Positions 14,190-46,192 of a stretch of DNA of 64,000 nucleotides are shown here, one piece after another. The position numbers and the translations under genes were made by a program. The stretch is from contig NIVC01003194.1 in the NCBI GenBank assembly GCA_002269645.1, positions 78,634 to 142,633 of the forward strand, in the 5' to 3' direction. The DNA is from Macrostomum lignano. Taxonomy: Eukaryota. A model generated the notes under the pieces. The model was not told the origin of the DNA and made no database searches. It saw only the letters and a list, made by a program, of their open reading frames with translations. Position 1 is the first letter of the stretch, and each line of letters starts with the position of its first letter.

Positions 14190-14825
14190 CTCCCTGACTC
14201 TCACCCTTCTCTCTCTCCCTTTCGTCTCTCCCTGACTCACACCCTTCTCTCTCTCCCTGACTCTCACCCTTCTATCTCTCCCTGACTCTAACCCTTTCGT
14301 CTCTCCCTGACTCTCACTCTTCCCTACCGACCTGACTCTCACCCTTCTCTCTCTCCCTGACTCTCCCTGACAGGGTCAGTCTCTCCCTGACTCTCACCCT
14401 TCCCTACCGAGCTGACTCTCACCCTTCTCTCTCTCCCTGTCTCTCACCCTTCTCTCTCTCCCTGACTCTCACAGGGTCAGTCTCTCCCTGACTCTCACCC
14501 TTCCCTACCGAGCTGACTCTCACCCTTCTCTCTCTCCCTGTCTCTCACCCTTCTCTCTCTCCCTGATTCTCACCCTTCTCTCTCCCTGACTCTCACTCTT
14601 CTCTCTCTCCCTGACTCTCACCCTTTTCTCTCTCCCTGACTCTCACCCTTCTCTCTCTCCCTGACTCTCGCCCTTTCGTCTCTCCCTGACTCTCACCCTT
14701 CTCTCTCTCCCTGACTCTCACCCTTCTCTCTCTCCCTGACTCTCGCCCTTTCGTCTCTCCCTGACTCTCACCCTTCCCTACCGATCTGACTCTCACCCGG
14801 CCTCTCTCTCTCCCTGACTCTCACT
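14190..14825. repeat. CT-rich minisatellite, about 25 bp unit (ctctcacccttctctctctccctga)
   Basis: Lies between the convergent 3' ends of NECAB and PMVK. Confidence 0.9.
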
Positions 14826-14913: not shown

Positions 14914-16293
14914 TCAATCAATCAATCTATCAACAAACAGATCAATCCATCGATCAATCTCACTGTCGCACTCTCCGCCGCTATTATCCAACTCCGAGTC
15001 CCACCGCTCCCAGGAGTCCAGTGCGCACTCGGACTCCGCATCGTCAACCCCGGGAACGAAGGCCCAGCCGCGCCGGGTTCGAGTCTCGTCTGAGGCCCGC
15101 AGGCGGAGCAGGTGAACCCGGCCTGGGTAGGCGGACTGGAGTGACAGATCAGGGAGACTGAGGTCATCCTTCACAAGCTCCAATTATCACTTTAGTAAAG
15201 AAAATGACTTATAGCAATCAAAATATCCTTAGAAACTAGGAATTATCCTAACAACTGGGAATAACCCTAGCAACCAGGAATAGCCCTAGCAACCCCTTAA
15301 TATCCCTAGCAAACCGGAAATACACTAGCAACCGGGAGTAACCCTAGCAACTGGGAATAACCTTAGCAACCGGGAATAACCTTAGCAACCGGGAATAACC
15401 TTAGCAACCGAAAATAACCTTAGCAACCGTGAATAACACAGCAACCGGGAATGACGCTAGCAGTCGGGAATAACCCTAACAAACAATAATAACCCTAGCA
15501 ACAGGAAATAACCTTAGCATAACCTTAGCAACCGAGCATGACCCTAGCAAACGGGTATAACCCTAACATCCGTAAATAGCCATAGCAACCGGGAATAACC
15601 CCAAAAAACCGTGAATAGCCATAGAAACCGGGAATGACCCTAGCAACCGGGAATAGCCATAGAAACCGGGAATGACCCTAGCAACCGGGAATAGTCATAG
15701 AAACCGGGAATGACCGTAGCAACCGGGAATAGCCATAGAAAAACCGGGAATGACCCTAGCAACCGGGAATAGCCATAGCAACCGGGAATAACCCTAGCAA
15801 CCGGGTATAACATTAGCTACAAAGAAAAGAATCGCTACTTTGGAATAAAGCAAATCCTTATCAAACCCTAGAAACCGTAGACACACTCAAAAACAGTCAG
15901 TCAGGACAATACCCTCACCAGAAAGTATTGGATATCGGTAGGCCTGCGTACATCTGACACCACCCAGAGCCCGTCAGGAGGCGGTTGCGCCATCTGCACC
16001 GCCAGCCGGCAGAAGCAGCCAGGATCGGCAGCTCGCAGCCGCTCACCCCAGGCGATCATGTCAGCCCTGAAGGCCTCCTTGTACTCTGTGGAATCCGCCA
16101 GTCGGTCTGCATCGAGTTGGTGCAGCCTGGCGTACTCCGCCTTCAGCGGCTGGCTGACCCGAACGCAAGCGGCTGGAAAGTTGCGCTCAGCCGCGGCGGC
16201 TAATATTCGAGAGGTCACGTGATCTTTACCGGATTTGCGCTTGCCGGAGATCAGCAGCAGCTGGCGAGGCTTGAGACTGCAGTTTGAGGCCGA
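14914..16293 (-). CDS. PMVK: Phosphomevalonate kinase (animal type), 2 exons; no genomic in-frame ATG at the N-terminus
   Basis: Exons 16293-15919 and 15135-14914 (GT-AG, phase 0). Motifs LLISGKRKSGKD, LKAEYA, YKEAFRADMIAWGE, VVSDVRRPTD and RGWAFVPGVDDAESECALD. The frame begins right after the acceptor ctttcatctcaactgcAG (16294-16295). Confidence 0.92.
15235..15815. repeat. Minisatellite, about 19 bp unit (ccctagcaaccgggaataa)
   Basis: Fills the PMVK intron. Confidence 0.9.
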
Positions 16294-16315
16294 CTGCAGT
16301 TGAGATGAAAGCGGT
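16294..16315 (-). promoter_or_regulatory. Candidate trans-splice acceptor of PMVK
   Basis: Pyrimidine-rich tract plus CAG immediately 5' of TCG GCC TCA; phase 0 with the PMVK frame. Confidence 0.6.
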
Positions 16316-16429
16316 GGGGCGAATCCAGTTAATATCCTGTACGCACACTGGGACTTGGAATTGGCATTTGGCGCTGATGCTTAACCTTCTTGAGGATGAT
16401 ATATGTATGAGGGAATAAAAGATTAAGGG

Positions 16430-16985
16430 AGAAATGGGGGATGGGGAGCTGAAGGGAGAAATGGGGAGAGGAGATGGTGGAAATAGGGAGGGAGAGATGA
16501 AGGGAGAGATGAAGGGAGGAAGAGATGAAGGGAGAAATGAGATGGACGAGGGATGATGGGAGAAAATGTTACAGAAAGAGATGAAGGGAGAGATGAAGTA
16601 AGAAATGGGAAAAGGGGAGGAGAGACGAAAAATGGGGAAAGGGGAAGATGCAGGGAGAAATAGGGAGAAATGAGGAGAGGGAGAGATGAAGGGAGAGATG
16701 GGGAGAGGGGGGAGATGAAGGGAGAAATATGGAGAGAAGGAGATGAAGGGAGAGATGAGGAGAGGGATTGAGATAGATGAAGGCAGAAATTGGTAGAGGA
16801 GATGAAGAAAGAAATGAGATAGACGAGGGATGATGGGAGAAAAGGTTAAAGGTAGAGATGAAGGGAGAAATGAGGACAGGGACTGATGAAGGAAGAGATG
16901 ACGGGAGAAATAGGGAAAGGGAAATGAAGGGAGGGATGAGAGAAACCGAAGAGATGAAGGGAGGATAGAAAGGGAGAGTTAGAAG
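16430..16985. repeat. GA-rich low-complexity degenerate repeat (gagatgaagggag)
   Basis: Purine-rich on the + strand. Confidence 0.85.
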
Positions 16986-17504
16986 GCAGACGCATAGATA
17001 AGGAACTCATGTAGGAGAAGCCAACACCCCAACAGAGCCAGAAAGCTCACTAGCCATATAAAAGCTGCCATAAATTCAGGACTTTAAGCATATAACACAT
17101 AGGCCTAGTGCTGTGGCCCCAGTATCTTTTTGTTAGTAAACTTTCAAGTTCCAGCACTATGAATTATTACTATGAATATTAGTAGCCACTGGCAAGTTGA
17201 ACACCAGCACAGTGAGAAAGGCAAACAAAACGCATAAAGTATACAGGCGTTAATGCTATTACTAATGTGGACAGATACTATAATTTATAAAACTTGTGTG
17301 CTCAACGATACGGGGCGTAGCTGAACTGCTGATTAGCAGGTTAATACGATGGATTTTAGATAATTCTCGACCTTCATTGTCCCGCAGAAGCGTTGTAACA
17401 TTTCTGGATAGCACACGGACATTGCAGTAGGAATTTTGAAACATTTTCTAAGTGGGGCGCTTTATATTCCCGAAGTTTTACAATCTCAAAGTTTTTTAAT
17501 ATCC

Positions 17505-18520
17505 TCAATAGTTCACAACCACAATGTTCACAATCCCCAATAGTTCACAACCACAATGTTCACAATCCCCAATAGTTCACAATCACGAATAGTTCACAAT
17601 CCCCAATATTTCACAATCCCCAATAGTTCACAAAAATCCAATAGTTCACAATCCCCAATAGTTGACAATCCCCAATAGTTGACAATCCCCAATAGTTCAC
17701 AATCCCCAATAGTTGACAATCCCCAATAGTTCACCATCCCCAATAGTTCACAATCCCCAATAGTTGACAATCCCCAATAGTTGACAATCCCCAATAGTTC
17801 ACAATCCCCAATAGTTCACCATCCCCAATAGTTCACAATCCCCAATAGTTCACAATCCCCAATAGTTGACAATCCCCAATAGTTCACAATCCCCAATAGT
17901 TCACCATCCCCAATAGTTCACAATCCCCAATAGTTGACAATCCCCAATAGTTCACAATCCCCAATAGTTCACCATCCCCAATAGTTCACAATCCCCAATA
18001 GTTCACAATCCCCAATAGTTGACAATCCCCAATAGTTCACAAACCCAAATAGTTCACAATCCCCAATAGTTCACAATCCCTAATAATTCACAACCACAAT
18101 GTTCACAATTCCAACAGTTCACAATCCTTAATAGTTCGAAATCCACAATAGTTCACAATCCCAAATAGTTCACAATCCCAAATAGTTCACAATCCCAAAT
18201 AGTTCACAATCCCAAATAGTTCACAATCCCCAATAGTTCACAATCCCTAATAGTTTACAATCCCCAATAGTTCACAATCCCCAATAATTCACAACCACAA
18301 TGTTCACAATTCCAACAGTTCACAATCCTTAATAGTTCGAAATCCACAATAGTTCACAATCCCTAATAGTTCACAATCCCAAATAGTTCACAACCACAAT
18401 GTTCACAATTCCAACAGTTCACAATCCTTAATAGTTCGAAATCCACAATAGTTCACAATCCCCAATAGTTCACAATCCCTAATAGTTCACAATCCAGAAT
18501 AGTTCACAATCCCTAATAGA
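17505..18520. repeat. Minisatellite, 17 bp unit (ttcacaatccccaatag)
   Basis: Tandem array between SMYD4 and PMVK. Confidence 0.95.
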
Positions 18521-19780
18521 TCACAAAAGGTTTCATAAACGTGACTAATATTCCGAATTATAGTCTGTGAACTAACTCCATAAAAATTGGTAAAGTTTAA
18601 GCAGCCCATATTCTGTGTTTGAGGTGTCGAAAAATTGAATTTTATTTGATTATAATGTCAACCTTATCAACTATATTTAGGCTAACGCAAGGAATGAAAA
18701 CGAACACCCTAGCGGACTGCAAGCCGAAACAAAACTAAGTGCTTCTCCAACAAAAACAACAATTTTACAAGATGAAAAACCTGCTAAAAACGCCCTGTTC
18801 ATCAATTAGACTAATTGGATATTTTCCCTACACAAAAGAAGCAAAAGTCTGGCATGCATTCTACTTAATGAGCTGGTTTTGTTGGCCAAGAATTGCCAAG
18901 AGCCTGGCTCAAAGGTTGCATAGAAATGATCAAGGTTGTTTTCTTAAAACTGTGTATGAGTGCTGTGCCTTCAGTGAATTTCCGTCAGTAGCTGGCTGTG
19001 AGCTTGAAGAAAAGCTACAGAATTACACAATTTTTTAATCATACTGCCAGTTTTTTAAATAAAATTTAATGAATGAATTCGCCAACAAGTTGCACAACTC
19101 GGAAGCTTTTGTTAGCTTCGGGACAATCTGCGAAAATTTATATTATTTAGCATAGCAAATATTAATTAACAAATTAATACACACGGTAAAATTTATCCAT
19201 AAAAACTGCTTGCAAAACAACTGATGCTAAAACTCTCCCTTAGTGATTTTTAAAAAAATTCGATATGTTTGCATTCATGCTTAAACCAGATTAAAGAGAA
19301 GGCACAAATTCTTTTGGAGCCAAATATTTGTAGCATAACAGGTAGAAAAAGCTGAAAAAGTGATGGTAAAACAGGGGTAAAATGCTTACTAAATAAATAA
19401 TGATGTACAATATTAGTAGCAATATATAATAAGTAATAAAGGTGAATAATCAGTTGTCGGTGTCAAAATTTCGCAACTAAGTATTAATAAGTCATGAATC
19501 ATGCAATTAAAAAATCTGGCCAAAAAACGGAGCACACAATATTGATTTTATTGACTTATTCCAAAGCTAAAATATAGAAAAAGAGCGTCATAAAAAATTC
19601 GATGCACATACACCTGTTGTTTCACTGCAAACAATAATACTGATATGATAGGATAAAGACTTCATGCAAATACCAGAACAAGGACTACTGACATTGCAAA
19701 TAACAATTCTTTTAGCTGAGATGGCATTAAAAACGCACAGATGGCATAGAAGTTGATTGTCAATCCATCACAACCAGCAT

Positions 19781-21724
19781 TCAGTCTGTCCCGCCGGTGT
19801 CCAAGCAGCCCCGCGCGCTCCACACCATCTTGACGCACTCTTCGGCGTCGTTAAACCACCGATGCGGCCGTCTGACACGACGCTGCAGCAGGCGGATTAG
19901 CGACAACAGTCGGGCCTCGAAACGCGAGTTCAGCTCGTTAGCTAAGAGTGGCGCGGAAGTGGAGAATGAGGACACGAACTCGGCTACAACCCCGACAGTT
20001 GATTCCACCTCTGCTTTGATTGCTGGATCGACAACAAAATTGGCAACATCGTATAAATTGTTTTTATCGGCACCCTCGACTTCGCTCTTATCGTCCTTAG
20101 CAATCGCATCAATCCATCTAGGCTGCAACGCCAACAAGCCATCATACAGTGGCCAATCATTCTCGCAAGCAACACAGTCGCAGTCGAACAAATACTGAGC
20201 TGCAAGACTTTCTTGACGCTGCTGTTTCGGATGCACAGCCCAATGCAAACCGTAGTTGTCAAGGAGCTCCTCGCCTTTAGCAATCGGTCGGAGAGCTCGA
20301 ATCTCCAGTCTCAAACCGGGACAAGTGACTCGCGATACATTCGGATCGCAAGAATGATTAATTAAACTAGCCGTTGGATACACAGCCGACCCAATGTCTC
20401 TGATAGTCAGTGCAGAAATATCCACTGAGCTGCCATTGTCAGTACTACTACTAGTAGTCAGCCTACTCGGCGGAGTGGACAATGCAGTTACATCGTGAGC
20501 ATTGCACGGCACCAGCATCAGATGGCGCAGCAGTGCTGCAACAAGTGGGGCGGCTACATCTAGCTGAGAATTTGCCTCAGACTCAACACTGAGCAGCAGA
20601 GCCATCTGGCAGGCAACGGCGACTCGCTGAGCCAAATCGCGACTCTCTCGCTGTCGTTCTCCAGCTACCAAAGCCAGCACCGATTGATAATCGCCAGCAG
20701 ATCCGAATACCGATTCGAAATCTTTGAAATTCTTTGCCTTAGCAACAGCTTGAGCAACGGAAACCGGACCGCCAGCAGCGATCACGGTGGCGAAAGCGAG
20801 CCGACCAATGCTCGCATTGAATGCGGAGTCCAACCAGCCAGCCAGCCAGCCGCATTCCACCCTGTGGACCGGGTCGTTATCCCGACAATTCTCCGAGCAG
20901 AAGCCAACAACTGAGCAGTCGCTACAGGGCAGCAACCGTTGGCAAGGTGCCAAGCAGGCTGAGCAGTGACTATCGCGAAGATTTGACAGCAGAATGGCGC
21001 TAAAAGCCGGCTCAGAGACCAACAGGTCTCCAACATCGACGTCTTCAAGAGTAAGAAGACAGCGACCGCGACTTTCGTCTGCCAGAGCGAGCTGCACCTT
21101 GGCGCTGGCGTGCGGCAGCTGTTGATTAAAATCCCGCAACAACGATTGAGATGCTGCTGCTGGCTGGGAAACACTTGAGGATTTCGACACTGACATTCTC
21201 TTCTGACAGTCAGCGATGCGACCTGTCAGCTTACCGGCCCGCTCGTCGCCATACGGCAACCGTAGAGCCGCTTCAGCATCGGCTATGGCTTCCGCATAGC
21301 AACCGAGACGTTTGAACACCAGCGAACGGTTGGCGAAAGCCACGGCAAGATCCGAGCTACCTGGCTGGGCGTGCCGGATGCATTCAGAAAATCGCAGCGC
21401 CGCTAAACGCAGCAGGCCGCAGTCGAGGGCTTCCAGACCGGCCGAACGAGCTTCCGCTAGGCGAGCTGGACTCTTGGCGTCGCTAGGCAACGGACGCTGA
21501 TGCTTTGTCCAGACGGTGGCACTTCTGGCAGCATAGTTAGACCAATCAATCGAGGCAAGCACTCGTTCGGCAAGGCGAAGTTCGAATTCCATGGATGCCG
21601 TGGAATCGTTGAGAATATTGGTTGCTTCGTTTGAGCCTAGCCAGTCAAGAGCTGCGGCTGCGGCTTTAGTACCGAGCGACTTCATGGACTGCAGCATGCT
21701 GCTGCTCTTGACTGGGGATGCCAT
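19781..21724 (-). CDS. SMYD4: SET and MYND domain lysine methyltransferase with N-terminal TPR (SMYD4-like), intronless, 647 aa
   Basis: TPR segment AVAFANRSLVF. MYND finger CSACLAPC-CSDC-FCSENC-HRVEC. SET motifs AVYPTASLINHSCDPN and ELLDNYG. Post-SET YLFDCDCVAC. Confidence 0.88.
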   Translation of the reverse strand: MASPVKSSSMLQSMKSLGTKAAAAALDWLGSNEATNILNDSTASMEFELRLAERVLASIDWSNYAARSATVWTKHQRPLPSDAKSPARLAEARSAGLEALDCGLLRLAALRFSECIRHAQPGSSDLAVAFANRSLVFKRLGCYAEAIADAEAALRLPYGDERAGKLTGRIADCQKRMSVSKSSSVSQPAAASQSLLRDFNQQLPHASAKVQLALADESRGRCLLTLEDVDVGDLLVSEPAFSAILLSNLRDSHCSACLAPCQRLLPCSDCSVVGFCSENCRDNDPVHRVECGWLAGWLDSAFNASIGRLAFATVIAAGGPVSVAQAVAKAKNFKDFESVFGSAGDYQSVLALVAGERQRESRDLAQRVAVACQMALLLSVESEANSQLDVAAPLVAALLRHLMLVPCNAHDVTALSTPPSRLTTSSSTDNGSSVDISALTIRDIGSAVYPTASLINHSCDPNVSRVTCPGLRLEIRALRPIAKGEELLDNYGLHWAVHPKQQRQESLAAQYLFDCDCVACENDWPLYDGLLALQPRWIDAIAKDDKSEVEGADKNNLYDVANFVVDPAIKAEVESTVGVVAEFVSSFSTSAPLLANELNSRFEARLLSLIRLLQRRVRRPHRWFNDAEECVKMVWSARGCLDTGGTD

Positions 21725-21914
21725 TTGTCTGTTGGAGCTGCTTGACTGGCATGAGATAATGGGTTGGATGGGTTACAGGTGAATAAGGCGTGCTCTGTAC
21801 GACGAGAGTAGAAGCACGAGTACCTAAGAAGTACCTAAGACGTACGATATTCTTACATCTGCGAGTCTGTGACGCATAGGGTTTTAGGTTCGTGTTGCAT
21901 CTATGGGGTGGTGG

Positions 21915-24030
21915 TGTATTTATGGCGTGGTGTTGTATCTAGATGGTGATGCTGTATCTATGGCGTAGTGTGGTGTTGTATCTAGATGGTGATGCTGTAT
22001 CTATGGTGTGGTGTTGTATCTAGATGGTGATGCTGTATCTATGGTGTGGTATTGTATTTAGATGGTGATGCTGTATCTATGGCGTAGTGTTATATTGTAT
22101 CTAGATGGTGATGCTGTATCTATGGCGTGGTGTTGTATCTAGATGGTGATGCTGTATCTATGGCGTGGTGTTGTATTGTATCTAGATGGTGATGCTGTAT
22201 CTATGGCGTGGTGTTGTATCTAGATGGTGATGCTGTATCTATGGCGTGGTGTTGTATCTAGATGGTGATGCTGTATCTATGGCGTAGTGTTATATTGTAT
22301 CTAGATGATGATGCTGTATCTATGGCGTAGTGTTGTATTGTATCTAGATGGTGATGCTGTATCTATGGCGTAGTGTTATATTGTATCTAGATGGTGATGC
22401 TGTATCTATGGCGTAGTGTTGTATTGTATCTAGATGGTGATGCTGTATCTATGGCGTAGTGTTATATTGTATCTAGATGGTGATGCTGTATCTATGGCGT
22501 GGTGTTGTATCTAGATGGTGATGCTGTATCTATGGCGTAGTGTTATATTGTATCTAGATGGTGATGCTGTATCTATGGCGTGGTGTTGTATCTAGATGGT
22601 GATGCTGTATCTATGGCGTGGTGTTGTATCTAGATGGTGATGCTGTATCTATGGCGTGGTGTTGTATTGTATCTAGATGGTGATGCTGTATCTATGGCGT
22701 GGTGTTGTATCTAGATGGTGATGCTGTATCTATGGCGTGGTGTTGTATCTAGATGGTGATGCTGTATCTATGGCGTAGTGTTATATTGTATCTAGATGAT
22801 GATGCTGTATCTATGGCGTAGTGTTGTATTGTATCTAGATGGTGATGCTGTATCTATGGCGTAGTGTTATATTGTATCTAGATGGTGATGCTGTATCTAT
22901 GGCGTAGTGTTGTATTGTATCTAGATGGTGATGCTGTATCTATGGCGTAGTGTTATATTGTATCTAGATGGTGATGCTGTATCTATGGCGTGGTGTTGTA
23001 TCTAGATGGTGATGCTGTATCTATGGCGTAGTGTTATATTGTATCTAGATGGTGATGCTGTATCTATGGCGTAGTGTTGTATTGTATCTAGATGGTGATG
23101 CTGTATCTATGGCGTAGTGTTATATTGTATCTAGATGGTGATGCTGTATCTATGGCGTAGTGTTATATTGTATCTAGATGGTGATGCTGTATCTATGGCG
23201 TGGTGTTGTATCTAGATGGTGATGCTGTATCTATGGCGTAGTGTGGTATTGTATCTAGATGGTGATGCTGTATCTATGGCGTAGTGTTGTGTTGTATCTA
23301 GATGGTGATGCTGTATCTATGGCGTAGTGTTGTATTGTATCTAGATGGTGATGCTGTATCTATGGCGTAGTGTTATATTGTATCTAGATGGTGATGCTGT
23401 ATCTATGGCGTGGTGTTGTATCTAGATGGTGATGCTGTATCTATGGCGTAGTGTGGTATTGTATCTAGATGGTGATGCTATATCTATGGCGTAGTGTTGT
23501 GTTGTATCTAGATGGTGATGCTGTATCTATGGCGTGGTGTTATATTGTATCTAGATGGTGATGCTGTATCTATGGCGTGGTGTTGTATCTAGATGGTGAT
23601 GCTGTATCTATGGCGTGGTGTTATATTGTATCTAGATGGTGATGCTGTATCTATGGCGTGGTGTTGTATCTAGATGGTGATGCTGTATCTATGGCGTAGT
23701 GTTATATTGTATCTAGATGGTGATGCTGTATCTATGGCGTAGTGTTATATTGTATCTAGATGGTGATGCTGTATCTATGGCGTAATGTTATATTGTATCT
23801 AGATGGTGATGCTGTATCTATGGCGTGGTGTTGTATCTAGATGGTGATGCTGTATCTATGGCGTAGTGTGGTATTGTATCTAGATGGTGATGCTATATCT
23901 ATGGCGTAGTGTTGTGTTGTATCTAGATGGTGATGCTGTATCTATGGCGTAGTGTTGTATTGTATCTAGATGGTGATGCTGTATCTATGGCGTAGTGTTG
24001 TATTGTATCTAGATGATGTGATGTATCTAT
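21915..24030. repeat. Minisatellite, 38/43 bp units (gtatctagatggtgatgctgtatctatggcgtggtgtt)
   Basis: About 2.1 kb array between SIRT6 and SMYD4. Confidence 0.95.
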
Positions 24031-24565: not shown

Positions 24566-25936
24566 CTAAGCAAGCTTTGAACGTTTAGTCGCGGTGGCAG
24601 AGTTAGACTCATCTGCGCTCGAATGTTCAAGTTTCTTTTTCATATCGGTGACAACTTCATCTTTGATTTTGATACTTTGATTTGAACTCTCCGACGAGGT
24701 GCGTTGAGCACTTTCCAAAGTGCGCTCTGTACTTTCAGAAATGCGTTCCAAAGTGCGCTCTGTACTTTCCGAAGTACAATGTGCACTTTCCGAAGTGCAT
24801 TTTGAACTTTCCAAAGTGCGTTCTGTACTTTCAGAAATGCGTTCCAAAGTGCGTTCTGTACTTTTCGAAGTACAATGTGCACTTTCCGAAGTGCATTTTG
24901 AACTTTCCAAAGTGCGTTCTGTACTTGGAATCTCGCATTTAGCTTCTTTTTGAGCTTCTCTATCGATTTTTTGATTCTGATCAGACTCGGCGAATCGCCA
25001 TGGAAACCGTTCACTCTTTCGCGTATGCTTAGAAAACAGTCTCAACGGTTGCAGGCGAAGCAACGGCCTCAGCATCTCTTCGGCATCAATGCCGAGCAGT
25101 TCTCTACAGACCAACGCCATGACAAGATCGCAACGAGCATTTATACGCAGATAACTCTGAGCATCTTTCTTTGTAGGCTGCAGATTAATAATGACTAATT
25201 TGCCGCCCATTGTGGGCAGATCGGCGGCCGGAACAATCTGCAAACTGGTGCCCAGAGTCAGATTAACGGTAGCCCGACTGGAATGCTCGCGAGCTCGACG
25301 AAGATCTACCTGAGGCAGCTGATGCTCCCAGTCTAGCACCGTGTCCAGCATCTGGCCGCCGCAGATGCCGTCAACACTGTCACCAGCATCGCCACCGGCT
25401 TTGACGGATTTCTTTCTGCCTCGCCTAGCCGGAGCTCCGCACCGCCTCCCGGTGGCTTTCTGACCGACCGTCTCCACCGGTTGGTCTCTCGCCCGGTGCA
25501 AGCCGCACCGGGCGCACCGCTCAACAAACATATCGCCATGCAAAATCGACAACCGATTGCGAGGAAATCCAGACCGAAGGTGCAAACCGTCAACATTCTG
25601 CGTCACCAGGTAGTGAACGAATCCGGCCGTTTCCAAGGCAACCAGAGCGGCGTGAGTAAGTGTTGGCTGAGCCTCTTCAAACTTGGCCCCGGCTTCAACT
25701 GTTCGACCTTCGCGTTCTAGAGTCCAGACGCCGTTGGGGCCGCGGAAATCCGGGATTCCGGCCGAGGTGCTGACGCCGGCTCCCGTGTGGACAACGACTC
25801 GAGCTCCGGGCTGTCGAATCAGGTCCACCAGCTGACGAGCTTTCAACTCCCAATCGGCTTGGGACTCGTGAGTTTCGGGCAGGCCCAGAGTGCCTTTGTC
25901 CGAGTATTCGGACAGCCCGGCCGAGTAGTTAGCCGA
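24566..25936 (-). CDS. SIRT6: NAD-dependent deacylase sirtuin 6, intronless coding region, about 457 aa including a supplied Met
   Basis: N-terminus SANYSAGLSEYSDKG matches the SIRT6 start (M)SVNYAAGLSPYADKG. Also HTGAGVSTSAGIPDFRGPNGVW, QNVDGLHLRSG, the catalytic His in ILHGDMF, zinc-binding Cys residues and DTVLDWE. The frame begins after the acceptor ccttcctcccacctccAG (25937-25938). Confidence 0.92.
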   Translation of the reverse strand, partial: SANYSAGLSEYSDKGTLGLPETHESQADWELKARQLVDLIRQPGARVVVHTGAGVSTSAGIPDFRGPNGVWTLEREGRTVEAGAKFEEAQPTLTHAALVALETAGFVHYLVTQNVDGLHLRSGFPRNRLSILHGDMFVERCARCGLHRARDQPVETVGQKATGRRCGAPARRGRKKSVKAGGDAGDSVDGICGGQMLDTVLDWEHQLPQVDLRRAREHSSRATVNLTLGTSLQIVPAADLPTMGGKLVIINLQPTKKDAQSYLRINARCDLVMALVCRELLGIDAEEMLRPLLRLQPLRLFSKHTRKSERFPWRFAESDQNQKIDREAQKEAKCEIPSTERTLESSKCTSESAHCTSKSTERTLERISESTERTLESSKCTSESAHCTSESTERTLERISESTERTLESAQRTSSESSNQSIKIKDEVVTDMKKKLEHSSADESNSATATKRSKLA

Positions 25937-25956
25937 CTGGAGGTGGGAGGAAGGAG
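25937..25956 (-). promoter_or_regulatory. Candidate trans-splice acceptor of SIRT6
   Basis: Strong pyrimidine tract plus CAG exactly where the conserved initiator Met would lie. Confidence 0.7.
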
Positions 25957-26039
25957 ATGAACTGTTGGTGTGTTGCCGTACCGACTGTTTTTCTATAACG
26001 TTATGGACCCTAATCATCTCTATTCTCTCTAAAAAATCC

Positions 26040-27475
26040 CTGCCATCTCTAAACCCCCTTAATCTCATTTATCTGTTCTCTCCCCCAATCACAGCCATCT
26101 CTAATCCCCCTCAATCCCATTTATCTCTGTTCTCTCCCCCAATCACAGCCATCTCTAATCCCCCTCAATCCCATTTATCTCTGTTCTCTGCCCCAATCAC
26201 AGCCATCTCTAATCCCCCTCAATCCCATTTATCTCTGTTCTCTCCCCCAACCACAGCCATCTCTAATCCCCCTCAATCTCATATATCTCTGTTCTCTCCC
26301 CCAATCACAGCCATCTCTAATCCCCCTCAATCCCATTTATCTCTGTTCTCTGCCCCAATCACAGCCATCTCTAATCCCCTCAATCCTATTTATCTCTGTT
26401 CTCTCCCCCAATCACAGCCATCTCTAATCTCATTTATCTCTGTTCTCTCCCCAATCACAGCCACCTCTAATCCCCTTTAATCTCATTTATCTCTGTTCTC
26501 TACCCCAACCACAGCCATCTCTAATCCCCTTTAATCTCATTTATCTCTGTTCTCTACCCCAATCACAGCCATCTCTAATCCCCCTCAATCTCATTTATCT
26601 CTGTTCTCTACCCCAACCACAGCCATCTCTAATCCCCTTTAATCTCATTTATCTCTGTTCTCTACCCCAACCACAGCCATCTCTAATCCCCTTTAATCTC
26701 ATTTATCTCTGTTCTCTACCCCAATCACAGCCATCTCTAATCCCCTTTAATCTCATTTATCTCTGTTCTCTACCCCAATCCCAGCCATCTCTAATCCCCT
26801 TTAATCTCATTTATCTCTGTTCTCTACCCCAATCACAGCCATCTCTAATCCCCTTTAATCTCATTTAGCTATGTTCTCTACCCCAATCCCAGCCATCTCT
26901 AATCCCCTTTAATCTCATTTATCTCTGTTCTCTACCCCAACCACAGCCATCTCTAATCCCCTTTAATCTCATTTATCTCTGTTCTCTCCCCCAATCACAG
27001 CCATCTCTAATCTCATTTATCTCTGTTCTCTCCCCCAATCACAGCCACCTCTAATCCCCTTTAATCTCATTTATCTCTGTTCTCTACCCCAATCACAGCC
27101 ATCTCTAATCCCCCTTAATCTCATTTATCTCTGTTCTACCCCAATCCCAGCCATCTCTAATCCCCTTTAATCTCATTTATCTCTGTTCTACCCCAATCCC
27201 AGCCATCTCTAATCCCCTTTAATCTCATTTATCTCTGTTCTACCCCAATCCCAGCCATCTCTAATCCCCTTTAATCTCATTTATCTCTGTTCTACCCCAA
27301 TCCCAGCCATCTCTAATCCCCTTTAATCTCATTTATCTCTGTTCTACCCCAATCCCAGCCATCTCTAATCCCCTTTAATCTTATTTAACTCTGTTCTCTC
27401 CCCCAATCACAGCCATCTCTAATCCCCTTTAATCTTATTTAACTCTGTTCTCTCCCCCAATCACAGCCATCTCTA
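26040..27475. repeat. Minisatellite, about 52-54 bp unit (cagccatctctaatcccctttaatctcatttatctctgttctctaccccaatca)
   Basis: Array between the DGAT1-like gene and SIRT6. Confidence 0.95.
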
Positions 27476-27847: not shown

Positions 27848-30800
27848 TCAAAGATAGTACTGACAGTAGTCAGCATAGCCCAGTCTAGCTAGCACTGGCA
27901 GGCCAAGCACAAGGCAGAGCCAAACGAAGGCATTGTTGCCGAATCTGACGCAGGCGGCATCCAGAATGGGCAGCACGATGGCCACAGTGAGCAGAGGCCA
28001 CGGCTGGGGCGATCGAAGCACTGCGGACACAACCAGCTGGGCCAGGAGAGCCCAGGCTAGACTAGGCAGATTGAATTCCGCTGCGGATGGCCACACAGAC
28101 TTCAGCAGGTTGGTCAGGCTTGAAGCATTCCACCAGAGTCGCTTGGTTTGAGTTAGTTTGCTACTGATAGTAGTGTCCTCAGCTGAGGGTTTCTGCTGCT
28201 GAAAATATTTTTTTGGTGAAAAATGATTTCTTATGTTTCTTTTTGTGGAATTCTTGCGTTACAATGATTGGCATGGAAAGGCATTTCCCAAGCAACTTTT
28301 AAAGACGATTCCTAAATAACTTCAAAGGGCGATTCCTAAATAACTTCAAAGGGTGATTCCTAAAAATCTTAAAAGCTTACACTAAACTTAGAAACGAACA
28401 ATGAAAAGCTAAAAATAAAGAAATAGCACTTACAAAGTCACTGCCAGACTGAAAGCAGCAATCCATCAGTTTCAGAATCCGATCCATTGCCGCTCCTGCA
28501 GCCAAGCAGACGGCAATAACAGGAGGCGACAGGCGCAGTTGCCTCTCAACCATTACCAGCCAGTAGGACGCATTGTACTCGTAGCTATTAGCAGCTGGAT
28601 CAGATGAGGCGGCAGCTAGAGAAGGCATTAACCACTGTTGAGTCAGAGCCACTATAGCAACTAATAGTCCTGCTAGTTGAGCAAAGCTAATTAGTAGCAT
28701 TCTGTTGACACTGACAACCCGAAGTTCAACGAGTTGCCTAGCAATGCGCTGACGCTGCAGGTGCAAATTGGTCAGCTTGAGGAACAGAGCCACACTGATT
28801 GACATTCCTGCGAAGCCGACAACTGTTGAAGCGGGAATAGCGAGACGGAGGGTTATATTACACCTGAGTTTATGGAGTGCATTAACACACCTGGGTTTTA
28901 TATGGGGTACATTAACACACCAGGGTTTTAAGGGTACAGAGAAGTATTTCAAAAAAGCTTTAATAAATCAAGGTATTCAAGGCTGCTCATAACACACTAC
29001 TCAACCCAAGTTTAAAGATAATAGGAAATACTCACTGGGCGAAGGCCTAGACCACAGCACAATGCAAGCGGGAGCCACCAGAAGCAGACAGGCACTGCTG
29101 GCCACTCCGAGCCTCCGATAGCCAGAAGAAGCGGCAAAAGCAGACGCATTCAGAGCGGCAAAAGCAACGCAGACCAGGCCGGCAATGCAGGCTGGACCGC
29201 CTCCAACAGCCAGGCAGCTAAGAGGATTTCCAGCCAGAGGGCCGTATCTTAGATGGGACTCTAACAGACAGCGAGCGATGCACATCGATAGAAGGATTAG
29301 CAATGGGCTTAGTAGGCCTCTGAAAGCGCCTCTGCTTTGGCCTAATTGGCCTGGCCGACTTAGCAGACTGTCTGCTGGACTGTGGATCTGCCGACGCCTG
29401 GAAGCATTTCCAGCAGGGAAGAGATGCGTCAGGTGAACTATTGAGTATGTTGATATTCAATTAATGGGATTTAATTTAAGATTTCATTTAAGGTTGTTTA
29501 AACATGTAAATTAAAAGCAAGCCCAGGTCTTTGGATTTTTTGTACAGATTGTAAAATCGAATTATAATTTTAAGATAAGTAAATGAAATTAGAGCATTAT
29601 CTAAATTAGCCTGTAACCTAGGTCCTAGATTTGATACTTGAGACAGAAGATACCACCTGAGAGAGTAGATACCACCTGAGACAGTAGATACCACCTAAGA
29701 GACTGTAGATACCACCTGAGAGACAGTAGATACCACCTGAGAGACAGTAGATACCACCTGAGAGAGTAGATACCACCTGAGAAACAGTAGATACCACCTG
29801 AGAGACTGTAGATACCACCTGAGAGACAGTAGATACCACCTGAGAGACTGTAGATACCACCTGAGAGACAGTAGATACCACCTGAGACAGTAGATACCAC
29901 CTGAGAGACAGTAGATACCACCTGAGAGACAGTAGATACCAACTGAGACAGTAGATACCACCTGAGACTGTAGATACCACCTGAGAGACTGTAGAGTGTA
30001 GATGCCACCTAAGAGACAGTAGATTCCACCTGAGAGACAGTAGATACCACCTGAGACAGTAGATACCACCTGAGACTGTAGATACCACCTGAGAGACTGT
30101 AGAGTGTAGATGCCACCTAAGAGACAGTAGATACCACCTGAGAGACTGTAGATACCACCTGAGAGACAGTAGATACCACCTGAGAGACAGTAGATACCAC
30201 CTGAGAGACTGTAGATACCACCTGAGAGACAGTAGATACCACCTGAGAGACAGTAGATACCACCTGAGAAACAGTAGATACCACCTGAGAGACAGTAGAT
30301 ACCACCTGAGACTGTAGATACCATCTGAGAGACTGTAGAGTGTAGATGCCACCTAAGAGACAGTAGATACCACCTGAGAGACTGTAGATACCACCTGAGA
30401 GACTGTAGATACCACCTGAAGAGACAGTAGATACCACCTGAGAAACAGTAGATACCACCTGAGAGACAGTAGATACCACCTGAGACTTTAGATACCACCT
30501 GAAAGACTGTAGAGTGTAGATGCCACCTAAGAGACAGTAGATACCACCTGAGAGACTGTAGATACCACCTGAGAGACAGTAGACACCACCTGAGAAACAG
30601 TAGATACCACCTGAGAGACTGTAGAGTGTAGATGCCACCTAAGAGACAGTAGCTACCATCTGAGAGACAGTAGATTATGTAGATACCATCTAAGAGACAG
30701 TAGATGCCACCTAAGAGACAGTAGATACCACCTGAGAGACTGTAGATACCACCTGAGAGACAGTAGATACCACCTGAGAAACAGTAGATACCACCTGAGA

Positions 30801-40599: not shown

Positions 40600-43025
40600 C
40601 TAGGTGGGACAATAGGTTTTCACGGTAACCTTAGCAACAGGCGACGCCGTTAAAACCGGTGCTTCACCAATCGAGACGGACACAGGTAAACCAGCAGGTA
40701 AACTAGGATTAATATCCTCTTCTTCATCAACAATACTATCGGCATCTTCTAAATCGTCCATGTCAATTTCGTGATGGTCACCTGTGAGCAGTAGTGCTCC
40801 AGTCTGCTGCTCCTGCTGCCGCTGTTGCTCCTGCTGCGACAGCATGTGCTGCCTAATATGCCAGGTGCAAGAATACTTACAGGTGAATGGCTTAGCGCAA
40901 ATAGTGCACTTGTACCGAACGCCCAGGTGACTATTCATATGCCGTTTCACCTGGTAGGAGGTGAAAAATGATTTGCCGCAAATTTCGCAACGAAAAAATC
41001 GACCGCCAGTGTGCGTGTGAAAGTGCCGGGTCAGGTTGCCGATCCATTTGAACGGCTTGGAGCAGGCTGGGCACAGGTAATACCGGATGCCGTTCACCTC
41101 CTGCTGTTGCACCTGCACCGGGCGAATGGGGATTGCTATTCCGACTGATTTAACTGGTTAATTTAACATTCTGCTTTAGGGACTGGGATCTTGGGTTTAT
41201 AGGGACTGGGATCTTGTGTTTATAGGGACTGGGATCTTGGGTTTATAGGGACTGGGATTTTGGGTTTATAGGGACTGGGATCTTGGGTTTATAGGGACTG
41301 GGATCTTGGGTTTATAGGGACTGGGATCTTGGGTTTATAGGGACTGGGATCTTGGGTTTATAGGGACTGGGATCTTGGGTTTATAGGGACTGGGATTTGG
41401 GTTTATAGGGACTGGGATCTTGGGTTTATAGGGACTGGGATCTTGGGTTTATAGGGACTGGGATCTTGGGTTTATAGGGACTGGGATCTTGGGTTTATAG
41501 GGACTGGGATTTGGGATTTATAGGGACTGGGATCTTGGGTTTATAGGGACTGGGATCTTGGGTTAATAGGGACTGGGATCTGGGGTTTATAGGGACTGGG
41601 ATCTTTGATTCATAGGAACTGGGATCTTGGGTTTATAGGGACTGGGATCCTGGGTTTATAGGAACTGGGATCTTGGGTTTATAGGGACTGGGATCTTGGG
41701 TTTATAGGAACTGGGATCTTGGGTTTATAGGAACTGGGATCTTGGGTTTATAGGGACTGGGATCTTGGGTTTATAGGAACTGGGATCTTGGGTTTATAGG
41801 GACTGGATACTCCTTATCTATTAATAAGGAGTTAGAGATAACAAGATCTTGGGTTTATAGGAACTGGGATCTTGGGTTTATAGGGACTGGGATCTTGGGT
41901 TTATAGGAACTGGGATCTTGGGTTTATAGGGACTGGGATCTTGGGTTTATAGGGAATGGGATCTTAGGTTGATAGGGAATGGGATCTTAGGTTTATAGGG
42001 AATGGGATCTTAGGTTTATAGGGACTGGGAGCTTGGGATTATAACTACTGGGATCTTGGGTTTATAGGGACTGGGAGCTTGGGATTATAACTACTGGGAT
42101 CTTGGGTTTATAGGGACTGGGAGCTTGGGATTATAACTACTGGGATCTTAGGTTTATAGGGACTGGGAGCTTGGGATTATAACTACTGGGATCTTGGGTT
42201 TATAGGGATTGGGATCTTGGGATTATAGGGGCTGGGATTTTGGGTTTATAGGGACTGGAATTTTGGGTTTATAGGGACTGGAATTGCGGGTTTATAAGGA
42301 CAGGGATTTTGAGTTTATATGGAATGGAATTTCAGGTTTATCCAGACAGGGATTTTGTGTTTATAAGGTTTATATACCTGCTGCCTGCTCAGCTGTTTCC
42401 GCCTAGGCGCACAGATATGATGCTCCAACGAATACAGATTGCGAAAATGCTTGCCACACTTGGAGCACTGCAGCATCTTTGGCGGCACCTTAGTCGAGCT
42501 GAACTGATCCGATGACGCGGCGAGTTTCGGAGAGATTGGCGTAGGCAGCGGAGTCATTGTTGTACTACCTGACGAGACCCCTTCCGGACCGAGACTGTAC
42601 CGGAGCAAGCGACTCTGCCTACCAGACGATGCTGACAAGCCTTGGCCAACTCTGCCGCTGTCAATGACTAGATGAGTGAATGACTGCGACGCTGCAGATG
42701 TGCCAGCCTGTAGCTGCCTGCCAGACCCAGGAGCCACGTCCATGACTGGATCGCAGCCCATATCGTCAATCCAGAAAGACTCGCCATAGATGTCAGCGCC
42801 GCTGTTTGAGTCTTCTTGAGCACCGGCGCTAGACAATGATGACAATGTAGCAGTAGCAGTAGTCGATGGTTGAGAAGCTTCAGGAGCGGCAGCAGTAGCG
42901 GAACTGGATACTGATGGTTTCCGTACAATAGTAAACACTGGACGAGAGGAGCCGTCAGGATTGGCAGTTCGTCTAACCACTAGCATGTCGCTAGTGGGAA
43001 CCGGCATCTGCTGCTGTTCAGTCAT
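40600..43025 (-). CDS. C2H2 zinc-finger protein, 2 exons, about 386 aa
   Basis: Exons 43025-42378 and 41112-40600 (GT-AG, phase 0). Three tandem C2H2 fingers (CPACSKPF..LTRHFHTH, TGGRF linker, CEICGKSF..KRHMNSH, CTICAKPF..WHIRQH) plus a C2HC-like finger at the end of exon 1. Confidence 0.85.
41178..42310. repeat. Minisatellite, 23 bp unit (gggactgggatcttgggtttata)
   Basis: Fills the zinc-finger gene intron. Confidence 0.95.
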
Positions 43026-43194
43026 CGATTTCCTTAACTCTGCTGTTTACTGTAGGTAATAGATAAGGAGTATCCTTTAAAAATTTACAAATTGACAAAT
43101 TTTAAAACGCATGTATAATATTCAGAGCTCTTCTAAATGGTGGGTGCACGTTGGAGTAGTGGGGCTTTACTAATTGAAACGAGTGTACATTGGC

Positions 43195-44439: not shown

Positions 44440-45626
44440 CATCACTCAGCCTCAAAGCTACTAATCACTCAGCCTCAAAGCTACTAATCACTCAGCCTCA
44501 AAGCTACTAATCACTCAGCCCCAAAGCTACTAATCACTCAGCCAAAGCTACTTATCACTCAACCAAAGCTACTAATCACTCAGCCAAAGCTACTAATCAC
44601 TCAGCCAAAGCTACTAATCACTCAGCCAAAGCTACTAATCACTCAGCCAAAGCTACTTATCACTCAACCAAAGCTACTAATCACTCAGCCAAAGCTACTT
44701 ATCACTCAGCCAAAGCTACTTATCACTCAACCAAAGCTACTTATCACTCAACCAAAGCTACTAATCACTCAGCCCCAAAGCTACAAATAACTCAGCCAAA
44801 GCTACTAATCACTCAGCCAAAGCTACTAATCACTCAGCCCCAAAGCTACTAATCACTCAGCCATAAGCTACAAATAACTCAGCCAAAGCTACAAATAACT
44901 CAGCCAAAGCTACTAATCACTCAGCCCCAAAGCTACTAATCACTCAGCCCCAAAGCTACTAATCACTCAGCCCCAAAGCTACTAATCACTCAGCCCCAAA
45001 GCTACTAATCACTCAGCCCCAAAGCTACTAATCACTCAGCCCCAAAGCTACTAATCACTCAGCCCCAAAGCTACTAATCACTCAGCCCCAAAGCTACTAA
45101 TCACTCAGCCAAAGCTACTTATCACTCAGCCAAAGCTACTTATCACTCAACCAAAGCTACTTATCACTCAACCAAAGCTACTAATCACTCAGCCCCAAAG
45201 CTACAAATAACTCAGCCAAAGCTACTAATCACTCAGCCAAAGCTACTAATCACTCAGCCCCCCAAAGCTACTAATCACTCAGCCATAAGCTACAAATAAC
45301 TCAGCCAAAGCTACAAATAACTCAGCCAAAGCTACAAATAACTCAGCCAAAGCTACAAATAACTCAGCCAAAGCTACAAATAACTCAGCCAAAGCTACTA
45401 ATCACTCAGCCCCAAAGCTACTAATCACTCAGCCCCAAAGCTACTAATCACTCAGCCCCAAAGCTACTAATCACTCAGCCCCAAAGCTACTAATCACTCA
45501 GCCCCAAAGCTACAAATAACTCAGCCAAAGCTACTAATCACTCAGCCAAAGCTACTAATCACTCAGCCAAAGCTACTAATCACTCAGCCAAAGCTACTAA
45601 TCACTCAGCCAAAGCCAATAACTCAG
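44440..45626. repeat. Minisatellite, 21/23 bp units (ccaaagctactaatcactcag)
   Basis: Abuts and overlaps the PRELID3 stop codon. Confidence 0.95.
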
Positions 45627-46192
45627 GACGAAGCATCAGCAGTGGTATCTGCTATTCGATTAGCAATGACCCACTCAATAGCCCTGGGACCTTTGGCAGC
45701 CATTCTGTCGTACACAAAATCTTCTAAAATAGTTTCCACTAGGCCACCAATAGGCCACCAAGGACAGCAGATTCTGGCAGACTGCTGCAGAACTGTCCTT
45801 TCTGTGGGATTGTCTGGATGAGGTTTATACTCCAAGCGTTCCTCAAGTGTGATGCCTCTGCTAAATGTAATATTCTTACTGTGCAATAGGTAACTCCTAG
45901 CTCTAGGATCTACCATAGTGTGCTCGCTACCGTACCAGACGTCAACATCCAGATCAATCAAGGAGTTAAACAGTCTGTAAAATCCTAGATTAGTCAACCG
46001 GTGTACCACACCTGTAAACAGCAGGCCGAATAATCTGTGAGTTCGAAGAATGCCGTCCTTACTGACTGACCGAGACACCACATCTTGGCTTAAAACGCCA
46101 TTAAACATTGGATTAGGATATTTATTCATAGCCGCTTCAACCACAGTCTCCCAGCTGTGCTCGAACACGTGGCTACGCTCCCACACTCGCAT
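45623..46192 (-). CDS. PRELID3: PRELI/MSF1 domain lipid-transfer protein (PRELID3/Slowmo-like), 189 aa, intronless
   Basis: MRVWERSHVFEHSWETVVEAAMNKYPNP, ERLEYKPHPDNPERTVLQQ and KGPRAIEWVI match the PRELI family. The true ATG is at 46192; the ORF track start at 46201 is a TTG. Confidence 0.88.
   Translation of the reverse strand: MRVWERSHVFEHSWETVVEAAMNKYPNPMFNGVLSQDVVSRSVSKDGILRTHRLFGLLFTGVVHRLTNLGFYRLFNSLIDLDVDVWYGSEHTMVDPRARSYLLHSKNITFSRGITLEERLEYKPHPDNPTERTVLQQSARICCPWWPIGGLVETILEDFVYDRMAAKGPRAIEWVIANRIADTTADASS

What the first reader, a model, noticed from the sequence alone, without database searches (positions are those of the whole stretch)
16218..16340. PMVK has no start codon: the N-terminus begins directly at a 3' splice acceptor
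The PMVK frame contains no ATG for at least about 150 nt upstream of the conserved LLISGKRKSGK motif. The acceptor ctttcatctcaactgcAG joins in phase 0 to TCG GCC TCA. Adding a leader ending in AUG gives MSASNCSLKPRQLLLISGKRKSGKD (about 199 aa), which matches the length and start of animal PMVK. Flatworm spliced leaders are known to end in AUG, and that AUG can act as the initiator. No matching upstream coding exon was found before SMYD4.
Basis: partly seen in the sequence, partly recalled or inferred. Interest (0 to 1): 0.72.

Follow-up and report, generated by a model that had tools for sequence, protein, structure and literature searches.

The report
Flatworm PMVK start codon from spliced leader
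In the flatworm Macrostomum lignano, the phosphomevalonate kinase gene has no start codon of its own and almost certainly receives its AUG from the trans-spliced leader RNA, a mechanism already known in flatworms, so this is a clean but ordinary example.

Summary
The window is Macrostomum lignano contig NIVC01003194.1. On the minus strand, a two-exon phosphomevalonate kinase (PMVK) gene starts at 16293, directly after the acceptor CTGCAG (AG at 16295-16294). The frame is closed by TAA at 16383-16381. It has no in-frame ATG upstream, and none downstream until codon 79, which lies past the essential P-loop.

The published M. lignano spliced leader is 35 nt and ends in ATG. Joined at this acceptor it is in phase 0 and gives a 199-aa protein. 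Its P-loop glycine falls at residue 18, against a median of 16 in 113 orthologues.

All four genomic copies in GenBank, and the independent WormBase models, start the coding sequence at this same base and lack a methionine. The GenBank annotation cuts transcripts at peaks of leader-containing reads.

The neighbouring SIRT6-like gene does the same. Its first residue aligns with residue 2 of human SIRT6.

The mechanism has been known in flatworms since Cheng et al. 2006, so this is a new member of a known kind. I did not see leader-junction reads or the protein N-terminus directly. Interest is low to moderate.

The parts
16294..16295 (-). 3' splice acceptor AG of the PMVK first coding exon, the proposed spliced-leader trans-splice site
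   Evidence: Sequence aactgcAG|TCGGCC. It matches [T/C]TNCAG and has 70% pyrimidines in the 20 nt upstream. The AG is kept in all 4 genomic copies. The annotated CDS starts at the next base in all 4 copies.
15919..16293 (-). PMVK exon 1: 125 codons, SASNCSLKPRQLLLISGKRKSGKD...DIQYFL, with no ATG before codon 79
   Evidence: The donor CTG|GTGAGG follows at 15918.
16225..16245 (-). P-loop motif GKRKSGK (residues 17-23 of the genomic ORF, 18-24 once the leader Met is added)
   Evidence: It aligns with the human PMVK P-loop (3ch4).
15136..15918 (-). The single cis intron (783 nt, gtgagg...ccag), mostly a 19-nt tandem repeat
   Evidence: Intron length differs between copies (618-1811 nt).
14914..15135 (-). 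PMVK exon 2: 73 codons plus the TGA stop
   Evidence: The spliced product is identical to PAA52719.1 (P0001).
16381..16383 (-). In-frame TAA that closes the PMVK frame 90 nt upstream of the acceptor
   Evidence: It is conserved in all four copies.
16296..19780 (-). Outron / intergenic stretch between the SMYD4 stop and the PMVK acceptor (3485 nt). It is pyrimidine-rich on the transcribed strand and contains two tandem-repeat arrays.
   Evidence: No gene is called here in any copy.
19781..21724 (-). SMYD4-like single-exon gene (SET and MYND domains) immediately upstream on the same strand. It probably belongs to the same transcription unit as PMVK.
   Evidence: It shares the name prefix Mlig029511 with PMVK (g1/g2 and g3/g4) on two other contigs.
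24566..25936 (-). SIRT6-like single-exon gene whose annotated CDS also begins directly after an acceptor (ctcccacctccAG|TCGGCTAAC), without a Met. This is a second case of the same arrangement.
   Evidence: Its residue 1 aligns with residue 2 of full-length human SIRT6 chains.
27848..29372 (-). Three-exon membrane-protein gene (PAA52722.1), also annotated without a Met. In two other copies its CDS starts 15 nt further upstream, right after cggcAG|.

Best explanation
The PMVK pre-mRNA of Macrostomum lignano is probably transcribed together with the upstream SMYD4-like gene. It is trans-spliced at the acceptor AG at 16295-16294 to the 35-nt spliced leader. The upstream outron carries an in-frame stop and no usable AUG, and it is discarded. 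The mature mRNA then starts with the capped leader. The leader's last three bases, AUG, sit in phase 0 directly in front of UCG GCC UCA. Ribosomes start at this first AUG, 32 nt from the cap, and make a 199-aa kinase, MSASNCSLKPRQLLLISGKRKSGKD... Shown here: the gene anatomy, the lack of any genomic start codon, the phase and quality of the acceptor, the organism's identity, and public gene models that start at exactly this base. Inferred: that the leader is joined here (from an annotation built on leader-containing reads), and that translation starts at the leader AUG (by necessity, and by analogy with schistosome and tapeworm data).
For: (1) The organism is M. lignano and the window is identical to NIVC01003194.1.
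(2) Its leader ends in ATG and is followed by the donor GTAAG (PMC8629364).
(3) There is no in-frame ATG between the TAA at 16383 and codon 79, so no genomic AUG can yield a protein with the P-loop.
(4) The acceptor CTGCAG| matches the published trans-acceptor motif and is the only motif-matching AG in phase 0. The other two motif matches give 40-aa and 17-aa dead-end ORFs.
(5) GenBank CDSs of four copies start at this base and are flagged 'partial'. TBONE cuts transcripts at peaks of leader-containing reads. WormBase models from a different assembly also start with SASNCS.
(6) With the leader Met, the P-loop glycine is at residue 18. In 113 Met-initiated orthologues the median is 16 and the range is 9-61. 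The Pfam domain starts at residue 16, and the protein aligns with human PMVK from residue 8 onward.
(7) The SIRT6-like gene 9.6 kb upstream is built the same way, and its first genomic residue aligns with human SIRT6 residue 2.
(8) The leader AUG works as an initiator in vivo in Schistosoma and is needed for conserved N-termini in Echinococcus (PMC9851317, PMC3510090). The Macrostomum genome paper calls the final ATG a likely start codon (PMC10468722).
Against: I saw no read or cDNA that carries the leader-PMVK junction. The 199-aa Met-initiated protein is not in the protein collection. The annotation start is indirect evidence. It also shows at least one oddity nearby: the SMYD4 CDS starts just after a genomic ATG, where there is no AG. 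The four copies are too similar (11 or fewer differing codons) to show selection on the acceptor phase. Four other in-phase AGs (16355, 16349, 16271, 16262) could in principle accept the leader, though none matches the motif.
Confidence: 0.87

Rival explanations
1. An unannotated upstream exon with its own ATG is cis-spliced to this acceptor, or to the phase-2 acceptor at 16338-16337, and the leader plays no part in initiation.
For: The 3.5-kb upstream stretch is repeat-rich, which hampers transcript assembly. I inspected no reads.
Against: Two independent annotations and four copies all stop at the acceptor. The N-terminus already has normal length with a single added Met. No gene or exon is called in the interval. 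The neighbouring SIRT6-like gene, built the same way, has no room for anything but a Met.
Confidence: 0.04
2. Translation starts at a non-AUG codon in the genomic sequence: either the CTG two codons upstream of the acceptor on an unspliced transcript, or the CTG codons for L12-L14.
For: In-frame CTG codons exist. Near-cognate starts are used in other trans-splicing organisms (PMC9851317).
Against: The upstream CTG is CCG in the other three copies, and its context is poor (C at -3, C at +4). Starting at L12 would put the P-loop glycine at residue 6, shorter than any of the 113 orthologues, whose minimum is 9. On a trans-spliced mRNA the leader AUG comes first.
Confidence: 0.03
3. The leader is added at a different in-phase AG (16355, 16349, 16271 or 16262), or at several sites, so the real N-terminus differs by a few residues from MSASNCS.
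For: Four other AGs are in phase 0 with open frames of 188-219 aa. A neighbouring gene shows different annotated starts between copies.
Against: None of these AGs matches [T/C]TNCAG, and their pyrimidine content is lower. All annotated copies use 16293.
Confidence: 0.04
4. The locus is a decaying or misassembled gene copy, and the missing ATG is damage or an artefact.
For: M. lignano is a hidden polyploid with redundant copies (PMC8629364). One copy (L004, PAA65931.1) is frameshifted near codon 108.
Against: Three copies keep an intact 198-codon frame, canonical splice sites and every conserved PMVK motif. No copy has an ATG, so there is no intact 'parent' with its own start.
Confidence: 0.02

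Closest known systems
Flatworm mRNAs that use the spliced leader's 3'-terminal AUG as initiator methionine (Cheng, Cohen, Ndegwa and Davis 2006, J Biol Chem 281:733; called 'slORFs' in PMC9851317)
   Same: The leader ends in AUG. The acceptor sits in phase 0 at the first codon after the Met. There is no genomic AUG before conserved N-terminal residues. The target is a conserved housekeeping enzyme.
   Different: Those cases were described in Schistosoma, and extended to Echinococcus (PMC3510090). This one is in the free-living, early-branching Macrostomum lignano. In the papers I could search, I found no systematic statement on leader-AUG use for that species, only a remark that the ATG is a likely start codon (PMC10468722). 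I did not see PMVK named among the published cases.
Animal-type phosphomevalonate kinase (Pfam PF04275; human PMVK, PDB 3ch4)
   Same: Pfam score of 124.5 bits against a cut-off of 33.8. Match to human PMVK at E = 1.4e-47. The P-loop GKRKSGK and the GVDDAESEC motif are both present.
   Different: The initiator codon is not encoded in the gene. The C-terminal tail diverges.
Downstream genes of spliced-leader-resolved polycistronic units (nematode operons; M. lignano operons in PMC8629364)
   Same: The upstream gene is on the same strand. SMYD4 and PMVK share a transcription-unit name prefix. The 5' end is set by a leader acceptor.
   Different: The intergenic distance is 3.5 kb, or about 2.0 kb after removing tandem-repeat arrays. 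That exceeds the 1-kb repeat-adjusted threshold used to call M. lignano operons. Nematode leaders do not donate the start codon in this way.

Membership tests
Spliced-leader-AUG-initiated flatworm mRNA | The organism has an SL RNA whose exon ends in AUG, directly followed by a GU donor | tested here: met
   The organism was identified as M. lignano. The published leader ends in ATG and is followed by GTAAG (PMC8629364). The SL RNA gene itself is not in the window.
Spliced-leader-AUG-initiated flatworm mRNA | A canonical 3' acceptor lies at the 5' edge of the first coding exon | tested here: met
   CTGCAG| at 16295-16294 matches [T/C]TNCAG, with 70% pyrimidines upstream. The AG is kept in 4 copies.
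Spliced-leader-AUG-initiated flatworm mRNA | Leader-containing transcripts join at that acceptor | not testable with these tools
   No read data were available. Indirect support: the GenBank and WormBase models start at exactly this base, and the GenBank pipeline uses leader-read peaks.
Spliced-leader-AUG-initiated flatworm mRNA | The leader AUG is in frame with the main ORF, with no intervening stop | tested here: met
   ATG plus the exons gives a 199-aa ORF ending at the native stop.
Spliced-leader-AUG-initiated flatworm mRNA | No genomic in-frame AUG could give a protein with the conserved N-terminal region | tested here: met
   There is a stop 30 codons upstream, no ATG in between, and the next ATG is at codon 79, after the P-loop.
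Spliced-leader-AUG-initiated flatworm mRNA | The protein actually starts at the leader-encoded Met | not testable with these tools
   This needs proteomics, initiation-site profiling or a reporter. Support is by necessity and by the N-terminal length matching orthologues.
Phosphomevalonate kinase, animal type (PF04275) | Profile match above the curated cut-off, with the P-loop present | tested here: met
   124.5 bits against 33.8. Human PMVK 3ch4 matches at E = 1.4e-47. About 50% identity to many animal PMVKs.
M. lignano operon (PMC8629364 definition) | Repeat-adjusted distance to the upstream same-strand gene of at most 1 kb | tested here: inconclusive
   The raw distance is 3487 nt. Tandem Repeats Finder arrays cover about 1443 nt, leaving about 2.0 kb. 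I could not annotate transposable elements. The shared name prefix Mlig029511 for SMYD4 and PMVK suggests one transcription unit.

The most novel reading that the evidence does not exclude
Dependence on the leader AUG may be pervasive in Macrostomum lignano rather than occasional. In this one window, three of four consecutive same-strand genes (a membrane protein, SIRT6-like and PMVK) have no start codon of their own and begin at a leader acceptor. If that holds genome-wide, many of the roughly 20,000 trans-spliced genes would be obligately tied to trans-splicing for translation. Many GenBank proteins of this species marked 'partial' would then be complete apart from Met1. Obligate leader-AUG initiation would also date back to the base of the rhabditophoran flatworms, not only to the parasitic lineages.
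Probability: 0.4. Interest if true: 0.45.

Novelty: new member of a known kind. Interest (0 to 1): 0.25.

Why it matters
It explains why the GenBank and WormBase PMVK, SIRT6-like and neighbouring proteins of this model flatworm are listed as 'partial': they lack only the methionine that the leader supplies. It gives a clear, testable case of a conserved housekeeping enzyme (mevalonate pathway) whose translation depends wholly on trans-splicing, in a species where transgenesis is available. It also shows that gene finders and homology pipelines which require a genomic ATG will mis-annotate such genes. It does not reveal a new mechanism.

Tried and rejected
- I searched the window for the SL RNA gene or any 12-35-nt suffix of the leader and found none.
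- I looked up the Met-initiated 199-aa protein, in three allelic variants, in the 15-billion-protein collection, hoping for a transcript-derived entry. None was present.
- I tried to use the PRELI-like gene (46192..45626) as a control for how the annotation treats genes with their own ATG. Neither the Met nor the Met-less version is on record.
- I tried to explain why the SMYD4 CDS is annotated from the codon after its genomic ATG. I checked all six fetched copies for an allele lacking the 7-nt ACAAATG and found none. The methods sections of the annotation papers give no rule that accounts for it. It stays unexplained.
- I compared synonymous and non-synonymous changes among the copies. There are too few differences to say anything.
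- I considered scanning the public DNA collections for the leader-PMVK junction. I rejected this because those collections hold viral, metagenomic and prokaryotic contigs only.

Full report
**What is in the sequence.** The feature lies on the minus strand. Read in that direction, the frame is ...EG*ASAPNANSKSQCAYRILTGFAPPLSSQLQ|SASNCSLKPRQLLLISGKRKSGKDHV....
- The in-frame stop is TAA at 16383-16381. The 29 codons between it and the acceptor contain no ATG, and there is no in-frame ATG further upstream as far as 16419.
- The first in-frame ATG downstream is codon 79 (16059), well past the P-loop GKRKSGK at 16245-16225.
- The acceptor is aactgcAG| with AG at 16295-16294, and the exon starts with TCG at 16293.
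- Exon 1 runs 16293..15919 and ends CTG|GTGAGG. A 783-nt intron full of a 19-nt tandem repeat follows. Exon 2 runs 15135..14914 and ends in TGA.
- The spliced product is 198 aa. It is a clear animal-type phosphomevalonate kinase: Pfam PF04275 at 124.5 bits against a cut-off of 33.8, human PMVK 3ch4 at E = 1.4e-47, and about 50% identity to many animal PMVKs.

**Whose genome it is.** The 198-aa product is 100% identical to GenBank PAA52719.1, 'hypothetical protein BOX15_Mlig002561g5, partial [Macrostomum lignano]'. The window is identical to contig NIVC01003194.1 of assembly GCA_002269645.1 over the 4.4 kb that I compared.

**The leader.**
- M. lignano has one 35-nt spliced leader, CGGTCTCTTACTGCGAAGACTCAATTTATTGCATG. 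It is followed in the SL RNA gene by the donor GTAAG.
- About 30% of genes are trans-spliced, and the top motif at trans-acceptors is [T/C]TNCAG (PMC8629364).
- The PMVK acceptor CTGCAG fits this motif.
- I listed the 13 AG dinucleotides in the 250 nt around the start. Three match the motif, and only this one is in phase 0. The other two would give 40-aa and 17-aa dead-end ORFs from the leader AUG.
- Leader ATG plus the exons gives a 199-aa ORF ending at the native stop.

**Evidence that the leader is really joined here.** I could not inspect reads. The indirect evidence is as follows.
- The GenBank annotation was built with TBONE. That pipeline extracts leader-containing reads, trims the leader, maps the rest and cuts transcription units at the resulting peaks (PMC5730564).
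- In all four genomic copies of the locus (L001-L004), the annotated CDS starts at the T of TCG, right after CAG, and is flagged 'partial'.
- UniRef/WormBase models from the older ML2 assembly also start with SASNCS.
- A 5'-partial ORF would have been extended to the upstream stop if the transcript reached further. So the annotated transcripts begin at or within two bases of the acceptor.

**Evidence that the leader AUG is the initiator.**
- Necessity: no genomic AUG can give a protein with the P-loop.
- Length: with the leader Met, the first P-loop glycine is at residue 18. In 113 Met-initiated orthologues from the search it lies at residue 9-61, with a median of 16.
- Precedent: the flatworm leader AUG serves as initiator in vivo in Schistosoma (Cheng et al. 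2006, cited in PMC9851317). It is required for conserved N-termini in Echinococcus (PMC3510090). It is conserved across parasitic flatworm SL RNAs (PMC12582326). The Macrostomum genome paper calls the final ATG a likely translation start (PMC10468722).

**An internal control in the same window.**
- The SIRT6-like gene upstream on the same strand (25936..24566) is annotated in the same way. Its CDS starts right after ctcccacctccAG| with SANYSAGLSEYSDKG and has no Met.
- Against full-length human SIRT6 chains, its residue 1 aligns with human residue 2. The only residue missing is Met1.
- A third gene further upstream encodes a membrane protein (29372..27848). In two other copies it also starts directly after cggcAG|.
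- So the PMVK case is not isolated. Three of four consecutive genes here lack a start codon of their own.

**Likely transcription context.**
- SMYD4-like (21724..19781) and PMVK lie on the same strand, 3487 nt apart. About 1443 nt of that are tandem-repeat arrays.
- On two other contigs the two genes carry the same name prefix: Mlig029511 g1/g2 and g3/g4. Under the naming rule of PMC5730564, this means they were cut from one transcription unit.
- This is an inference from names. The repeat-adjusted distance of about 2 kb exceeds the 1-kb operon threshold of PMC8629364, so I leave operon membership open.

**Rivals.**
- A hidden upstream coding exon is unlikely. Two annotations and four copies show none, and the N-terminus has no room for more than a few residues.
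- Non-AUG initiation at the CTG two codons upstream is unlikely. That codon is CCG in the other three copies and has a poor context.
- CTG codons at L12-L14 would leave too short an N-terminus.
- A decayed gene is unlikely. Three copies keep intact frames and splice sites. One copy (L004) is frameshifted.
- Use of a neighbouring in-phase AG cannot be excluded without reads.

**Comparison and novelty.** The arrangement works exactly like the leader-AUG-initiated mRNAs of schistosomes and tapeworms, and it meets every defining feature I could test. Two features need wet-lab or read data: junction reads and the protein N-terminus. In the papers available to me, I found no systematic treatment of leader-AUG use in M. 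lignano and no mention of PMVK. I therefore rate it a new member of a known kind. It is useful for annotation, because the 'partial' proteins are complete but for Met1, and it is a convenient test case in a transgenic model. It would not surprise a specialist.

**Open oddity.** The SMYD4-like CDS is annotated as 646 aa, 'partial', starting at GCA (21721) immediately after a genomic ATG (21724-21722). The nearest AG lies four bases upstream of that ATG (caacAG|ACAAATG|GCATCC). All six fetched copies are the same. A leader joined at that AG would put its AUG out of frame. I could not explain the annotated start.

Noticed in passing
window 21700-21740 (minus strand); also L002, L003, L005-L007: The SMYD4-like CDS is annotated in GenBank as 'partial', 646 aa, starting at the codon right after a genomic ATG (21724-21722), although no AG precedes that point. 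The nearest acceptor-like AG is 4 nt upstream of the ATG, and a leader AUG joined there would be out of frame (about a 20-codon upstream ORF overlapping the real start). It may be an annotation quirk or something about leader handling. It is unexplained.
   Followed up: partly
window 24566-25938 (minus strand): The SIRT6-like gene starts directly at a trans-acceptor without a Met, and its residue 1 aligns with human SIRT6 residue 2. This is a second, even cleaner, leader-AUG-dependent gene. The outron contains in-frame ATGs that splicing would remove.
   Followed up: yes
window 27848-29389 (minus strand); L006 5247, L007 6606: A three-exon membrane-protein gene has no Pfam hit on record. One UniRef relative is named GPI ethanolamine phosphate transferase 3. 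Its annotated start differs between copies. Two copies start in phase after cggcAG|ATCCAC. The window copy starts 15 nt later, consistent with a different, out-of-phase acceptor (tccAG|CA GAC). This may reflect alternative trans-splice sites.
   Followed up: partly
L004 (NIVC01001605.1), about codon 108 of PMVK: One of the four PMVK copies (PAA65931.1, 139 aa) is frameshifted after ...QPPADG. It is either a decaying duplicate in this hidden polyploid or a long-read indel error.
   Followed up: partly
window 14198-14824, 15239-15826, 16485-16901, 17501-18526, 21930-24030, 26035-26500: Dense tandem-repeat arrays with periods of 13-167 nt fill the intron, the outron and the intergenic spaces. The largest is a 2.1-kb array with a 43/81-nt period between SIRT6 and SMYD4. 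The PMVK intron length varies from 618 to 1811 nt between copies because of such repeats.
   Followed up: partly
window 16400-16980 (minus strand): The roughly 600 nt just upstream of the PMVK acceptor region are an almost pure pyrimidine (C/T) low-complexity repeat on the transcribed strand. Such a tract might favour acceptor recognition in the outron.
   Followed up: no
window 45626-46192 (minus strand): A PRELI/SLMO-like ORF (Pfam PF04707, E = 1.3e-28) has its own ATG (MRVWERSHVFEHSWETV). Neither the Met nor the Met-less single-exon product is on record in the collection, so the annotated model probably differs or is absent.
   Followed up: partly
window 55640-58820 (plus strand): Remnants of an LTR-retrotransposon pol gene are present (RNase H, integrase zinc-binding domain and integrase core), split over several frames.
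   Followed up: no
window 40603-41157 and 42318-43046 (minus strand): Two ORFs contain C2H2 zinc-finger motifs, probably exons of one or two zinc-finger genes.
   Followed up: no
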